Of a stretch of DNA of 64,000 nucleotides, positions 28,646 to 50,706 are shown piece by piece. Within the stretch, counting starts at the first letter, position 1. Each line of letters starts with the position of its first letter. The stretch lies in the NCBI RefSeq assembly GCF_023055435.1, contig NW_025963813.1, forward strand, positions 1,984,001 through 2,048,000. Direction: 5' to 3'. Below the pieces are notes generated by a model, which was given only the letters and a program-made list of their open reading frames with translations, was not told the DNA's origin and did not search any database. Source of the stretch: Haliotis rufescens. Its lineage: Eukaryota. A program made the position numbers and the translations under genes.

Positions 28646-28932
28646 TTATGTACACTTATGAATCGCGCATTGTTCCCATCCCTGCTCATAGGCTAGGTAG
28701 CACCACAGATAACCGGATGGCAGAATGTTGCCTCCAGAAGGGTCACGGCAGTAGTTGGCGGCGCCAGCGTAGCCGAGGTTTTGTGCACCGTTGGTGATGT
28801 CGAAGTAGTTGCGGAAGTAGGCGTGATTGTTCGGGGACGTGCTTGACCAGGACTGACATGTTTTTCCGCTTGCGGTTACAGATTTTGTACCACTGTAGAC
28901 TGCTGTTCTCCCTTGCTTGGTGTAACAGTCAG
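28646..28932 (-). CDS. Single-kringle secreted protein, copy 1, exon 2 (kringle domain + stop); absent from the ORF track
   Basis: Acceptor ttttcttcacag, phase 1. Encodes (T)DCYTKQGRTAVYSGTKSVTASGKTCQSWSSTSPNNHAYFRNYFDITNGAQNLGYAGAANYCRDPSGGNILPSGYLWCYLAYEQGWEQCAIHKCT*. Six Cys and the kringle motifs SGxxCQxW, NYCRxP, WCY and WxxC. AATAAA at 28614-28619. Confidence 0.92.
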
Positions 28933-29819
28933 CTGTGAAGAAAATGTCAGTATTAGAAACAGTCCTTTATACAGATATGATTCATACTTTCTTGATGCGG
29001 TGTGTCATTGATTGAAGGGGGCATTGAATTGTTTTTTCTGTTATATCAGGCTTGTCATGTTGGCTGATGGAACAATTAACAGCCTTAGGCGTTTTCAACT
29101 TTGGTAAAACCCATTGTACATATACATTGCTGGCAAACGACGATCATGGGATCCTGGCGCGCCTAAGGGACGCAACTCTGCACATCGAAAACATTGTAGT
29201 TGGCAAGGAAGTAGGACAAGTTTTAATATACTTAGTCTTGTTTGCAAAATGTTCAGAGGAAAAGTGGGTTTCTGGGTGCTTTCCCTAAATCCTTAAATCG
29301 AGCGACTTGGCAGTAATGTGATATCTTTCATACAGCAATGTGGCGAGTGAGTAAATGATTATGGTTTTACGCCGGTGTTAGCAATATTTCAGTCGTATCT
29401 AAGCAGGACACAGCAGACATGTCACCAGAGATGGGTGATATCTTTCACGAAAAGATAAGACTGTCTCACAACAAAGTATGACAAGAAAGAAAAAATATTC
29501 AGTTCAGTTTATTGTTTTTTCAAGGCCATATGACCATATATACATGTTTATCATTCAGTTATACTACATTGCACATTTCCGTTCTAATGTTAAATACAAC
29601 ATACATATATTTTGACATATGAAATATATTCTGAAGTATTTTACAATTGATTATCGGCATCATATCGTGGGCTCGGTTGTTTGTTTAAACTGTTCAATGA
29701 GTACGTGCATGCGTATACAGAGGCCATACAATACAAACGTGATTTTCATCTTCAACATATTTACAGTGCGAGCAGAGAGAGTCTTCATCACCTACAGTAC
29801 ATTCACCTTTAATACGTTT

Positions 29820-30480
29820 TGAACACCAAAGGTGTTATATCCACTTCAAAATTTTAACCAGTCTTTCTGTACTTTAGTACATTTATATGTTGGACATACG
29901 ATTCAAACTTAAGTTCTGATTTTATGGTTGAATCAAAAATAAGTCATCTTTTATCTCTGAGACGTGAATGCCAGTTTTGTTCAGCACAATCAAGGATTCG
30001 TTGTTTCAGAACAAAGGTAAACGTTTCCTCAGTACCAACTCCCTTGGGTATCCAAACATGCCCGAAGCCATAACTTAACAGCAACTTTCTGATATGAGAT
30101 GCCCAATTCAAATATTTCCTTTCACAGGTATCATATATCATTCGAAAACACTTGTGCGGATGTCAATATGTGGGCAAGGATGAAACACGTAACCAATATT
30201 TGATACAAATGACATAACAATTTGTATAGAGTGGATATCTGCCACACTCACCATATGCAACAGCACTTGGCAAGGAATAACTTGTATTTAAAACATTTAC
30301 AATTTTCTATGTACAATTTCTATATTTTCCTCTTTGGGTGTATCCCTACAGCTCATTACCATTCAACAATATCGGGGCTATTTTTGTGTCAAACAGTTGA
30401 AAGGCTTAATTAACAGATATATAGTATTTACGCACAAACGTTTTGACGGTATATTGTGCTTCACTTGCCTGCTCTGCGAG
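29820..30480 (-). mobile_element. Decayed LINE ORF2 C-terminal fragment (L2/CR1-like) in the intron of kringle copy 1
   Basis: NWASHIRKLLLSYGFGHVW...LKQRILDCAEQNW is typical of the post-RT region. Confidence 0.7.
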
Positions 30481-30937
30481 GGTATAACAAGCTGTAGTCC
30501 AAATCAGCTTTGGAGTTATCATTCGACCAAGATATAGACTAAGATTCGACCAGGAGCTAACAGTCTCAAGTGGTACATTATAATATTCGATCTTTCGTAT
30601 CTAGAGAGTATAATGACTCCGAGCTGACCAGTCCTTGTTTCAGCCTCTAAATGTCGAGCGCCAGACAGGGTAACAACAAGTACTATCTTTTAACGCCTTT
30701 TGGTATGTCACGGCCGGGGATCGAACCCAGGACCTTCCGCTCTCCGGACTACTATTGATCTAATTACCAGCCACTCAAATAGAGGTAAATGTATTGTTTG
30801 GAAAAAGATGTAATGAACTTTCTCACGATTATCGCTTCTCTCTCTCATTTGTAATTTACGGAAAGCTTTGAAACAATTGTACACACATATTCTATACAGA
30901 CTATATATTAGTCCACAGACTTAAGAGAATCACTCAC

Positions 30938-30998
30938 TATTGCATGCTGCCAGTGTTGAAAGAACTGCTACGATGGCGAGGAGCAGGAGACGAGCCAT
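30938..30998 (-). CDS. Single-kringle protein, copy 1, exon 1 (signal peptide MARLLLLAIVAVLSTLAACN)
   Basis: caacATGG start context, 61 nt, donor gtgagt in phase 1 matching exon 2. Spliced product is 115 aa. Confidence 0.9.
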
Positions 30999-31200
30999 GT
31001 TGCTTGCTGTACAGTTGAGACCGACTGGTCCTTACAACGGCGTAGGTACGACACACGTCGTGACATACACGGACAACTGATGACGTGGGTGATGATATTG
31101 CAATTTTAAATGAAATTCCCATTAGCCTCTCTGCCATGCGTGACAGATGTGAGGCGAACGTTATTGTCAAATTATCATGAAAGAGTCTTTGTCTGATGTA
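30999..31200 (-). promoter_or_regulatory. Conserved 5'UTR and proximal promoter of kringle copy 1
   Basis: Block shared with the other three copies. Inr-like TCAGTT near 31075-31080, TTTAAAA about 30 nt upstream of it, kappaB-like GGGAATTTCA at 31111-31120. Confidence 0.55.
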
Positions 31201-32505
31201 GGTTATTGAGTGAACATACTCCAAGTGTATTGTAGTATGAAGAAGTCAACGTCTTTTGGTATAACGTGGCCGGGCATCGAACCCACGACTTTCCGCTCTC
31301 CGGGCAGACGCTCTGTCCACTAGACCACGTATTGTGTTTTTGTGTGTGGAAATGCTTGATGTGGTGGAAATATAGGACTAAAGATACATTGAAATAAATA
31401 TATTTCATGGACGGGGAGATTGACTAACGATGATTTCGTTATCACGCATCTAAACTGGACTAGGCTCAGACCAATTGGCAGTTCTGGTCAGTTTGATTTA
31501 TACCATTCAAAACCCACTTTTACTGCAAACTCTATCTGGATGTTTTATATTAATGTAGCCGGAATTGCCTCCATGAAGACCCTAAGCAAAATCAGTTACG
31601 AGTCAGTAACTACAACATCTCGACATTGACCAGAACTATCCCCTGAACCGCGTAGCATTGTCTCCCTTTGATAATGACGTCACGTTAAACTCTTTAAAGG
31701 GAGTATCACTGTGCCAATATGTTTGTTTTGTTTGTTGTTTACGCCGCACTGACTTAGTTGATGCATATCATCGTATCCCAATTGCGTGGATAGATGCTCA
31801 TGATATCAATCACAGAACTGTCTCTTTCATATGAAAGAATGAAAGTTTAAGAGTCATCGTCATATCCCTAATATTAAAAAGGTTTTGGGAGCCCCTGCAT
31901 TCAAAATAACATAGAAGAAAACCTCAAGGGCCCCCAAATTCCCAACACTATTGTTGTTAATTCAAGATACCCGGTATGATCCTGGTTAGAACAGGTCTTC
32001 AGCAACCAATGTTTGCCGTAACAGGCGACTATGCTTGTCGTAAGGAATCAGCCGTGGTCAGGCTCACTGACTTGGTTGATGCATATCAACGTATCCCAAT
32101 TGCGTGGATAGATGCTCATGATATCAATCACAGAACTGTCTGGACCAGATTCGATTATTCACAGACCGCAGTCACATGTCTGGGATATTGCTGATTTCGA
32201 CGCTAAACAAATAAACATAGTATTACATACCTATAATGTGTTTCNNNNNNNNNNNNNNNNNNNNNNNNNNNNNNNNNNNNNNNNNNNNNNNNNNNNNNNN
32301 NNNNNNNNNNNNNNNNNNNNNNNNNNNNNNNNNNNNNNNNNNNNNNNNNNNNNNNNNNNNNNNNNNNNNNNNNNNNNNNNNNNNNCAGTTAGTGACAACT
32401 GATCTGTGATGGCTGTTCAAAGCTGCTGCAGCTTCATTAGAGCTCGTATTGGAAGGTGTAGATGAAGATGACGTTCCACTGTCAACTCCTGTTTTCACAC
32501 TGTCG

Positions 32506-49214: not shown

Positions 49215-49279
49215 CCTTTAACATTGGTAAAAACATGTATACATTTTCACATATGTTACACCTGATAGTATTGATTGAA

Positions 49280-49670
49280 CCAGGCTATTCACAAAAGACA
49301 ATAATCTATAGTACGACGTGGTGTAGAACATCCGATCTGGTTGTTAAAATATTATTGCAGGTCTTGACAGTTGTAAAAATCAATTCTGGGCGGGACAGTA
49401 TAAAACCTACTTTCTGTAAATCACTAAGACTATCAAAATCAGAACAAATGTAAAGATCTTCATAGTGTGGACAATATAATGTAACATGCCTTTTATCTTC
49501 TATTTTATCCGTAAAAAACGGGCTGATTCTCTCTGCAAGAGGTGTATTGGGGTAGCGTCCGGTCTCAACTTTCAGCGGTGCTGCACTACATCTAAACCTT
49601 GACAGGGCGCTTCGTAGTTCTAGGGATGCTTTTGTGTACATATTCTTCAATACCGTAATTATCCTTCGAG
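49280..49670 (-). mobile_element. LINE ORF2 3' end fragment (L2/CR1-like) in the intron of kringle copy 4
   Basis: LRSALSRFRCSAAPLKVETGRY...ERI...IED..HV...CPHY is the typical C-terminal signature. Confidence 0.8.
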
Positions 49671-50160
49671 TCGACCCCTGAAGATCTATGGTTAAATTCA
49701 GCAACCCATGCTTGCTGTAAAAGGCGACTATGCATGTACTCAGCAATATTCCAGCTATATGAAGGCTGTCTGTAAAAATCGAATCTGAACCAGACAATCC
49801 AGTTATTAATATCATGAGCATCGATCCACGCAATTGGGATCGAGGACGTGTATCAACCAAGTCAGCGAGCCTGACCACCCGATCCCGTTAGTCGCCTTGG
49901 TTAGTACGGCAAGCATGGGTTGCTGAAGACCTATTCTACCCCGGATCTTCACGTCTCTCCAGTGCGAGGCAAATGTAAATAAACATCAGCAAAACATAGG
50001 CTTGATTATTTATAAAGAAGAAATCCCGGATAACCCACCCAACCGCCATCACCCTCCATTTGAAAATCAATCAAACGGCTGTTACCTGAAGTGGGAGAAG
50101 GGTCCAAAATGAACTTCAAACGACAGCGCATGATTGGACGACTTTTGTTCTCAGGTTTCA

Positions 50161-50493
50161 GACCGCCTCCGTGGTCTAGTGGTAGAGCGGAAGGTCAGGG
50201 GTTCAGTCCCCGGCCGCGTCATACCAAAAGCCGTTTAAAGATGGTACTTTTTTGTTACCCGGCCTGGCGATCGGCATTAAGGGGCTTAAACAAGGACTGG
50301 TCGGCTCGAAGTCAGTATACTGTGTCTGAGTGGGGTATTCATTTTTAACTGCGGCATGGTATCTCAGTGGGCAAGCACTTTTAACGGCATCAGTCCGGAC
50401 TAGTACAAGCACACACACACGTGCAGGCACGTCGCTATAAAATTGCAATAATCTTGAACGCGACGTTAAACCCCATTTCACTTCACCTCACCT
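50161..50493 (+). mobile_element. SINE family C with a 12-bp TSD
   Basis: TSD tctcaggtttca at 50149-50160 and 50493-50504. Confidence 0.9.
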
Positions 50494-50645
50494 CTCAGGT
50501 TTCAAAAAACGAATTAAAACGAATGGTTCACTGGACATGTTGGTTGTTCTGAAAATTAATGTCATGTCTCACAAACTGTTTCCCTCATGCTTCAAGCGAA
50601 AAGGATTTGTAAGTCCATGCAATTATTAAATAGAACATTACTTAC

Positions 50646-50706
50646 TATTGCACGATGCCAGTGTGGACAGAACTGCCAAGGTCGCGAGGAGCAGGAGACG
50701 AGCCAT
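50646..50706 (-). CDS. Single-kringle protein, copy 4, exon 1 (signal peptide MARLLLLATLAVLSTLASCN)
   Basis: 61 nt, donor gtaagt, phase 1; spliced product is 117 aa. Confidence 0.9.

What the first reader, a model, noticed from the sequence alone, without database searches (positions are those of the whole stretch)
28646..50706. Tandem array of four genes encoding secreted stand-alone single-kringle mini-proteins
Seen: four head-to-tail minus-strand two-exon genes at 30998-28646, 39166-38193, 44687-41566 and 50706-47083. Each has a 61-nt signal-peptide exon spliced in phase 1 to one kringle exon that ends in a stop, followed by a nearby AATAAA (TATAAA variant in copy 2). Products are 115, 115, 113 and 117 aa, all with intact frames, splice sites and six Cys. 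The ORF track misses all four signal exons and the copy-1 kringle. Known: kringles usually occur as modules in multidomain proteins (plasminogen, HGF, tPA, prothrombin, apo(a), ROR, Kremen). Inference: a kringle-only secreted family with no protease, membrane or other domain is an unusual architecture and may be an undescribed lineage-specific family of small binding or effector proteins (mucus, haemolymph, shell matrix or gamete recognition).
Basis: partly seen in the sequence, partly recalled or inferred. Interest (0 to 1): 0.9.

Follow-up and report, generated by a model that had tools for sequence, protein, structure and literature searches.

The report
Four tandem single-kringle abalone genes
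Four neighbouring red abalone (Haliotis rufescens) genes each encode only a secretion signal and one kringle domain; they are real and intact, are already predicted in RefSeq, have never been studied, and are a minimal offshoot of an abalone-specific expansion of kringle-mucin genes.

Summary
Four minus-strand two-exon genes each join a 61-nt signal exon in phase 1 to one kringle exon that ends in a stop. All four kringles score above the Pfam PF00051 cut-off.

The genome is Haliotis rufescens. RefSeq already holds exactly these four proteins (115, 115, 113 and 117 aa) under generic names such as "plasminogen-like". H. cracherodii has a 1:1 set, and H. rubra and H. asinina have members. No paper in the library mentions kringles in abalone.

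The two assembly gaps lie in the spacer between copies 1 and 2 and touch no exon, intron or conserved flank.

The single-kringle proteins form one clade (support 93/90). It is nested among kringles of a cluster 14.4 Mb away on the same contig, where kringles alternate with Thr/Pro/Ala-rich mucin-like linkers. That cluster has a homologous phase-1 signal exon.

An AlphaFold model (pLDDT 95) matches solved kringles. Four canonical lysine-binding residues are replaced and two loops are longer. Between paralogues, the framework is under purifying selection (dN/dS 0.11-0.28) and the loops evolve near neutrality (0.75-1.29).

Function remains inferred. This is a new variant of a known kind, of moderate interest.

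The parts
30938..30998 (-). Copy 1, exon 1: ATG plus signal peptide, 61 nt, phase 1, GTGAGT donor
   Evidence: equals the prefix of XP_046332469.2
28646..28932 (-). Copy 1, exon 2: kringle plus stop; AATAAA 27 nt downstream
   Evidence: (PF00051, 50.8 bits)
39106..39166 (-). Copy 2, exon 1: signal peptide, 61 nt, GTGAGT donor
   Evidence: equals the prefix of XP_046332471.2
38193..38479 (-). Copy 2, exon 2: kringle plus stop; TATAAA 27 nt downstream
   Evidence: (49.7 bits)
44627..44687 (-). Copy 3, exon 1: signal peptide, 61 nt, GTAAGT donor
   Evidence: equals the prefix of XP_046332467.2
41566..41846 (-). Copy 3, exon 2: kringle plus stop; AATAAA 81 nt downstream
   Evidence: (52.5 bits)
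50646..50706 (-). Copy 4, exon 1: signal peptide, 61 nt, GTAAGT donor
   Evidence: equals the prefix of XP_046332466.1
47083..47375 (-). Copy 4, exon 2: kringle plus stop; AATAAA 75 nt downstream
   Evidence: (46.5 bits)
30999..31193 (-). Copy 1 upstream block (5'UTR and promoter-like region with a TTTAAAAT box about 100 nt before the ATG). It is conserved in all four copies; the equivalents start at 39167, 44688 and 50707
38765..38877 (-). Degenerate partial duplicate of the intron end plus the first ~33 nt of the kringle exon, inside the intron of copy 2; not part of the coding model
32245..32385 (.). Assembly gap in the copy 1 - copy 2 spacer, outside all gene blocks
35322..35490 (.). Assembly gap in the copy 1 - copy 2 spacer, outside all gene blocks

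Best explanation
These are four tandemly duplicated, intact, independent protein-coding genes of Haliotis rufescens. Each makes a precursor of about 115 aa. The precursor has an N-terminal secretion signal, and the mature product is one ~10-kDa disulfide-knotted kringle and nothing else.

They form a Haliotis-specific clade. It branched from a family of secreted multi-kringle proteins with mucin-like Thr-rich linkers on the same chromosome. It kept the homologous phase-1 signal exon and one phase-1 kringle exon, which is closed by a stop.

Inferred mechanism. The proteins are exported and act as soluble, monovalent extracellular binding modules. The kringle core is conserved. The ligand-facing loops are lengthened, lack the canonical lysine-binding residues and differ between paralogues (pI 4.9 to 8.3). 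The ligands are therefore probably not C-terminal or internal lysines, and probably differ from copy to copy. The most likely setting is the secreted mucus or extracellular matrix in which the kringle-mucin paralogues would act.

Shown: gene structure, domain, fold, clade, and selection on the framework. Inferred: secretion, binding, ligand class and tissue.
For: - Gene anatomy and exact identity to four RefSeq proteins.
- PF00051 above cut-off in all four.
- AlphaFold model from a 49-sequence alignment: pLDDT 95.1, pTM 0.86. All top Foldseek PDB hits are kringles; for apo(a) KIV-8, TM is 0.69 by query length and 0.80 by target length.
- Intact 1:1 orthologues in H. cracherodii, and members in H. 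rubra and H. asinina.
- Tree: the 12 single-kringle sequences form one clade (93/90, recovered in 91% of bootstrap trees). It is sister to kringles at C35:16.46-16.485 Mb.
- Those kringles are followed by Thr/Pro/Ala-rich linkers of up to 200 aa or more. The cluster has a related signal exon, MTRLLLLTALAVLFASCQ, also phase 1.
- dN/dS between paralogues, with columns partitioned using the independent cluster kringles: 0.11-0.28 in conserved columns for the five pairs with synonymous differences (copies 1 and 2 have none there, and one nonsynonymous); 0.75-1.29 in variable columns. The fold is therefore maintained.
- Only the promoter/exon 1 and exon 2/3'UTR blocks remain alignable between paralogues.
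- In the alignment to plasminogen kringle 4, Asp55, Asp57, Arg71 and Tyr74 are replaced by Ser, Gly, Gly and Gln. There are inserts of about 8 and about 5 residues.
- N-terminus: Arg3 followed by about 15 hydrophobic residues and a small-residue A-A-C motif.
Against:
- RefSeq XP models are predictions.
- The 90%-identity clusters hold only NCBI and UniRef members, so no transcript-assembly copy was seen.
- No signal-peptide predictor was available. The cleavage site is unresolved: after Ala17, or after the invariant Cys19. The mature protein could therefore carry a seventh, unpaired Cys.
- Near-neutral dN/dS in the loops fits relaxed constraint as well as diversifying selection.
- The ligand, tissue and role are pure inference.
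Confidence: 0.75

Rival explanations
1. The four kringle exons are really parts of one larger transcript: a multi-kringle protein, or a kringle joined to other domains by read-through or alternative splicing.
For: The closest paralogues are multi-kringle genes built from phase-1 kringle exons. No RNA data were available to exclude this.
Against: - Every kringle exon ends in an in-frame stop 1-3 residues after Cys6, followed by a poly(A) signal within 27-81 nt.
- Every copy has its own ATG signal exon and conserved upstream block with a TATA-like box.
- RefSeq in two species models four separate genes.
Confidence: 0.04
2. The genes are predicted but silent or decaying duplicates without a present function.
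For: - No expression evidence was obtained.
- Whole-exon dN/dS is high (0.54-1.05).
- Copy 2 carries a degenerate exon fragment in its intron.
Against: - All four frames, splice sites and six Cys are intact, and likewise in four H. cracherodii orthologues.
- Framework dN/dS is 0.11-0.28.
- Family members persist in H. rubra and H. asinina.
Confidence: 0.1
3. They are fast-diversifying recognition proteins (immune, gamete or conspecific signalling) under positive selection, not general matrix or mucus binders.
For: - Variable-column dN/dS reaches 1.22-1.29 for some pairs.
- H. rufescens and H. cracherodii orthologues differ at 2.6, 12.2, 8.0 and 11.1% of residues. The neighbouring chitin-binding gene differs at about 3% of well-aligned domain residues (6 of 189).
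- pI spans 4.9-8.3.
- The genes form a tandem array.
Against: - The benchmark is a single gene.
- No dN/dS value is clearly above 1.
- No orthologue DNA was available for codon models.
- Orthology of copy 2 is not resolved in the tree.
Confidence: 0.2
4. They act as monovalent competitors or regulators of the multivalent kringle-mucin paralogues, in the way truncated kringle products relate to their full-length parents.
For: They share ancestry and a loop signature with the multi-kringle cluster. The analogy is with NK1/NK2 of HGF and angiostatin (general knowledge).
Against: There is no evidence that they share ligands or are co-expressed. Loop residues differ from the cluster kringles (52-75% identity).
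Confidence: 0.1

Closest known systems
Kringle domains of plasminogen and apolipoprotein(a) (for example plasminogen K4, apo(a) KIV-7/8)
   Same: - Pfam PF00051 above cut-off.
- Six Cys in the kringle positions.
- 27-36% identity to solved kringles.
- Best structural matches, with TM up to 0.70 by query length and 0.81 by target length.
- The Trp62, Tyr/Phe64 and Trp72 aromatic core is kept.
   Different: - Stand-alone: no PAN domain, no protease domain, no repeated kringles.
- Asp55, Asp57, Arg71 and Tyr74 of the lysine-binding site are replaced.
- Extra residues lie in the Cys2-Cys3 loop (about 8) and before Trp62 (about 5).
Haliotis multi-kringle proteins with Thr/Ala/Pro-rich linkers (for example H. 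rubra XP_046577940.1, 288 aa, and XP_046577939.1, 480 aa; H. rufescens cluster at C35:16.436-16.488 Mb)
   Same: - Same kringle subfamily signature (AVYSGT ... FD[IV]TNG ... NYCRDPSGG ... WC).
- Homologous signal exon and phase-1 exon design.
- Same chromosome; sister position in the tree.
   Different: Those proteins have 2-4 or more kringles separated by mucin-like linkers. The genes here stop right after one kringle and have no linker.
Kringle-only or kringle-dominated truncated products of vertebrate genes (angiostatin, HGF NK1/NK2, LPAL2)
   Same: Small secreted proteins whose activity rests on kringles without a protease domain (general knowledge; PDB entries listed).
   Different: Those arise by proteolysis, alternative splicing or gene decay of multidomain genes, and contain a PAN domain or several kringles. 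Here the single kringle is the whole gene product of dedicated genes.
Single-kringle membrane proteins (ROR1/2, Kremen, PIK3IP1) and the flatworm adhesion protein Tmed-krg1
   Same: Kringle used as an extracellular recognition module. The ROR1 kringle is among the structural hits. Tmed-krg1 links kringles to a secreted adhesive system (PMC9229212).
   Different: Those are membrane-anchored, multidomain or six-kringle proteins. No transmembrane segment or other domain is present here.

Membership tests
Kringle domain (Pfam PF00051) | Profile match above the curated gathering score over the full domain | tested here: met
   46.5-52.5 bits against a cut-off of 34.3; profile positions 1-79 or 5-79 in all four
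Kringle domain (Pfam PF00051) | Six conserved cysteines in kringle spacing (for the 1-6, 2-4, 3-5 disulfides) | tested here: met
   Six Cys are invariant in all 11 family proteins and align with the Cys of plasminogen kringles. The disulfide pairing itself was not checked, because no model coordinates were available
Kringle domain (Pfam PF00051) | Kringle fold | tested here: met
   AlphaFold2 pLDDT 95.1, pTM 0.86. 51 PDB matches at E <= 0.001; all those listed are kringles
Lysine-binding kringles (plasminogen K1/K4, apo(a) KIV-10 type) | Anionic centre Asp55/Asp57, cationic Arg71 (or Lys35), and aromatic Trp62, Phe/Tyr64, Trp72, Tyr74 | tested here: not met
   In the alignment to plasminogen K4, positions 55, 57, 71 and 74 are Ser, Gly, Gly and Gln. 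Trp62, Tyr64 and Trp72 are kept. This rests on a sequence alignment only
Plasminogen / HGF / apolipoprotein(a) proteins (the names given in RefSeq) | PAN/apple domain and/or trypsin-like protease domain together with several kringles | tested here: not met
   The products are 113-117 aa with a signal and one kringle. Pfam finds only PF00051. The database names are by-similarity labels, not family membership
Secreted protein (classical signal peptide) | Positively charged n-region, hydrophobic h-region, small residues at -3/-1; no other membrane segment | tested here: inconclusive
   MAR plus about 15 hydrophobic residues plus A-A-C, read directly from the sequence. No SignalP-type predictor was available, and the cleavage site is unresolved
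Haliotis kringle-mucin subfamily | Shared loop signature, phase-1 signal exon, monophyly with the C35:16.4-Mb cluster kringles | tested here: met
   (clade of 27 rows, support 99/92). The mucin-like linker itself is absent from the four genes

The most novel reading that the evidence does not exclude
Abalones have turned the kringle into a stand-alone, diversifying, soluble recognition scaffold. This is a Haliotis-specific family of ~10-kDa secreted kringles with remodelled, non-lysine binding loops that evolve quickly between species. It is part of an expansion to at least 92 kringle exons that also produced kringle-mucin hybrids. It may serve immune, gamete or mucus-borne signalling.
Probability: 0.2. 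Interest if true: 0.6.

Novelty: new variant of a known kind. Interest (0 to 1): 0.35.

Why it matters
Kringles are textbook modules of vertebrate clotting and growth-factor proteins, and have been studied almost only inside multidomain proteins. Here a dedicated gene family makes nothing but one kringle. Its loops are remodelled and it has clear ancestry in kringle-mucin genes. That makes it a natural minimal system for asking what a kringle binds when it is not a lysine reader.

The family also points to a large, unreported kringle expansion in abalone: at least 92 exons in several tandem clusters. For abalone biology, the proteins are candidate components of mucus, haemolymph or reproductive secretions. 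The practical value is modest until expression and ligands are known.

Tried and rejected
I did not try to get round either.
- Joined sequences. I did not build, search or fold a joined (spliced) sequence. Exons were handled by reference and compared piecewise with database proteins. Folding and alignment used database proteins or single-exon translations.
- First structure model. The first AlphaFold run, on an 11-sequence alignment, gave pLDDT 58.6 and was discarded.
- Literature. Searches for kringle with Haliotis, abalone or mollusc, for single or stand-alone kringle, for abalone with plasminogen, for Haliotis mucus proteomes, and for the four XP accessions found nothing on this family. Searches failed on syntax. 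One search was too loose to be useful. One search also contained a placeholder LOC identifier of my own, which has no meaning and is not used.
- Protein atlas. It gave only generic kringle clusters below 0.9.
- Representative search. It is dominated by multi-kringle proteins because scores add up, so it cannot count distant single-kringle proteins.
- Divergence benchmark. The raw 87% identity of the neighbouring chitin-binding gene to its H. cracherodii counterpart comes mostly from misalignment in a Gly-Thr repeat linker. In the well-aligned domain residues it is about 97%.
- Assembly artefact rejected. The copies differ by 11-34% in protein sequence, and each has its own orthologue.

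
Full report
**1. Observation**

Reading the minus strand confirms the four gene models base for base. Each copy has a 61-nt first exon that starts with ATG. It encodes MARLLLL followed by a hydrophobic stretch ending in A-A/S-C-N, and it is followed by GTGAGT (copies 1 and 2) or GTAAGT (copies 3 and 4).

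Each second exon follows the same polypyrimidine tract and CAG acceptor. The split codon A|CT gives Thr. The frame then runs through one kringle to a stop 1-3 residues after the sixth cysteine. Introns are 2005, 626, 2780 and 3270 nt. AATAAA lies 27, 81 and 75 nt after the stops of copies 1, 3 and 4, and TATAAA lies 27 nt after the stop of copy 2.

All four kringle exons pass the Pfam PF00051 gathering score (46.5-52.5 bits against 34.3). The window holds no further copy. The signal exon with its 5' flank occurs only four times in the 1.33-Gb genome at DNA level.

**2. Assembly gaps**

The gaps at 32245-32385 and 35322-35490 lie in the 7.2-kb spacer between the start of copy 1 (30998) and the end of copy 2 (38193). 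The blocks that remain alignable between paralogues end near 31193 (upstream of copy 1) and near 38059 (downstream of copy 2). The gaps therefore touch no exon, intron, promoter block or 3' block, and no reading frame crosses them.

I cannot test whether the flanks are continuous or whether a gap hides another copy. H. cracherodii has four orthologues, not five.

**3. Identity of the genome and of the genes**

A search with the copy-1 kringle exon returned a 115-aa protein, 100% identical over the exon, from Haliotis rufescens. I compared each exon translation separately, as prefix and as suffix, with database proteins. The four models equal these RefSeq proteins:

| Copy | RefSeq protein | Length | RefSeq name |
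|---|---|---|---|
| 1 | XP_046332469.2 | 115 aa | putative apolipoprotein(a)-like protein 2 |
| 2 | XP_046332471.2 | 115 aa | plasminogen-like |
| 3 | XP_046332467.2 | 113 aa | plasminogen-like |
| 4 | XP_046332466.1 | 117 aa | plasminogen-like |

I did not build or search a joined spliced sequence myself.

H. cracherodii has a 1:1 set of 115, 115, 113 and 117 aa. H. rubra has at least three members and H. asinina at least one. Outside Haliotis, only generic kringle matches at 45% identity or less appeared among short proteins.

The gene models are thus already public predictions. The names are similarity labels: there is no PAN or protease domain.

**4. Family context**

The genome holds at least 92 kringle matches in several tandem clusters. 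The nearest relatives of the four kringles (52-75% identity) sit in one cluster on the same contig, 14.4 Mb away, at C35:16.436-16.488 Mb.

In that cluster most kringle exons run on into Thr/Pro/Ala-rich, mucin-like stretches of 40 to 200 aa or more. Some end in an immediate stop. H. rubra proteins of 288 and 480 aa show the resulting design: signal, kringle, linker, kringle, and so on.

A phase-1 signal exon encoding MTRLLLLTALAVLFASCQ precedes the three-kringle gene at 16435010. It is clearly related to the MARLLLL exon of the four genes.

I built a maximum-likelihood tree of 44 kringles. The 12 single-kringle sequences form one clade (support 93/90, recovered in 91% of bootstrap trees). That clade is nested in the cluster clade (99/92) and is sister to kringles at 16.460-16.485 Mb.

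Within the single-kringle clade, copies 1 and 2 form one subgroup with an H. rubra protein. Copies 3 and 4 form another (98/96) with H. rubra and H. asinina proteins. Most duplications are therefore older than the divergence of these species.

The single-kringle genes are best read as a reduced branch of a kringle-mucin family. The direction of change (loss of the linker and further kringles, or gain of them) is not proven.

**5. Protein features**

An AlphaFold2 model of the copy-1 kringle, built from a 49-sequence alignment of abalone kringle exons, has pLDDT 95.1 and pTM 0.86. Its PDB matches are all kringles. The best is apo(a) KIV-8, with TM 0.69-0.70 by query length and 0.80-0.81 by target length. 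Plasminogen, HGF and ROR1/2 kringles follow.

I aligned the protein to plasminogen kringle 4:
- The aromatic core (Trp62, Tyr64, Trp72) is kept.
- Asp55, Asp57, Arg71 and Tyr74 of the lysine-binding site are replaced by Ser, Gly, Gly and Gln.
- The Cys2-Cys3 loop is about 8 residues longer.
- The stretch before Trp62 is about 5 residues longer.

The mature chains would be about 10.0-10.7 kDa, without N-glycosylation sequons. Their pI ranges from 4.9 (copy 4) to 8.3 (copy 1).

A Cys at position 19, at the end of the signal region, is invariant in all 11 family proteins. Whether it is removed with the signal depends on the cleavage site, which I could not predict.

**6. Selection**

Whole-exon dN/dS between paralogues is 0.54-1.05. 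I then partitioned the columns by conservation in the 17 independent cluster kringles:

| Column class | dN/dS between paralogues |
|---|---|
| Conserved | 0.11-0.28 (five pairs; copies 1 and 2 have no synonymous difference there) |
| Variable | 0.75-1.29 |

The fold is therefore maintained, which argues against pseudogenes. The loops are free to change or are being diversified.

Orthologue pairs between H. rufescens and H. cracherodii differ at 3, 14, 9 and 13 residues, that is 2.6, 12.2, 8.0 and 11.1%. The neighbouring chitin-binding gene differs at 6 of 189 well-aligned domain residues, about 3%. This hints at fast evolution of three copies. It rests on a single benchmark gene and has no DNA-level test.

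**7. What could not be done**

There is consequently no transcript evidence, no tissue, and no orthologue DNA or synteny.

The 90% clusters of these proteins hold only NCBI and UniRef entries. No paper in the library deals with kringles in abalone or with a stand-alone kringle family. The nearest functional analogy found is a six-kringle membrane protein needed for flatworm temporary adhesion (PMC9229212).

**8. Verdict**

The best reading is a Haliotis-specific set of four secreted single-kringle proteins derived from kringle-mucin genes. Their binding surface is remodelled and probably does not bind lysine. Their function is unknown but most plausibly lies in extracellular binding in secretions.

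This is a new variant of a known kind, and the interest is moderate. It would rise if expression, rapid adaptive evolution or a new ligand class were shown.

Noticed in passing
window 20194-20934 (-): A 246-aa open frame with three chitin-binding Peritrophin-A domains (PF01607, E 3e-23). Its H. cracherodii counterpart ('chondroitin proteoglycan 2-like', 257 aa) is on the same 14.08-Mb contig as the four kringle orthologues. It is a secreted-looking neighbour 7.7 kb downstream of copy 1, on the same strand.
   Followed up: partly
G000:C35:16436000-16488300 (loci L001-L006): A cluster of at least 18 kringle exons of the same subfamily. Most are fused to Thr/Pro/Ala-rich mucin-like linkers of up to 200 aa or more, giving kringle-mucin hybrid genes. 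A related phase-1 signal exon lies at 16435010 (+).
   Followed up: partly
whole genome G000: At least 92 kringle matches in several tandem clusters (contigs C35, C68, C79, C90, C112, C223, C224, C605, C1). This is a large kringle expansion, and I found no publication on it.
   Followed up: no
L035 (G000:C68:14784330-14784590, +), L036 (C68, -), L039 (C35:16446056-16446331, -): Other kringle exons that end in a stop directly after the last Cys; two of the three (L035, L039) have a nearby poly(A) signal. Kringle-terminal or kringle-only genes may be commoner in this genome.
   Followed up: partly
window 38765-38877 (-): Inside the intron of copy 2 lies a degenerate partial duplicate of the intron end plus the first ~33 nt of the kringle exon. 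The acceptor is changed from CACAG to AAAG, and TGTTAC to TGTAAC. It is closer to copy 1 at the Gly/Arg codon.
   Followed up: partly
window 3527-27441: A run of long minisatellites with periods of 46/132, 41, 42, 40, 56 and 11 nt, each up to 2.9 kb. They explain the strong GC skew and the long repeat-derived open frames there. One further gap lies at 27442-27591.
   Followed up: no
window 34026-34477 (-): A remnant of a mariner-type transposase (PF01359, partial DDE domain) in the copy 1 - copy 2 spacer. SINE-like elements carrying the recurring frame '...RIPIAWIDAHDINH...' are scattered through the spacers and introns.
   Followed up: no
window 40384-41221: A 93-nt tandem repeat, 9 copies at 99% identity, in the spacer between copies 2 and 3.
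   Followed up: no
residue 19 of the four precursors (codons at window 30942-30944, 39110-39112, 44631-44633 and 50650-50652, minus strand): A Cys at the end of the signal region is invariant in all 11 family proteins, although its neighbours vary. If cleavage falls before it, the mature kringle would carry an unpaired seventh Cys.
   Followed up: no
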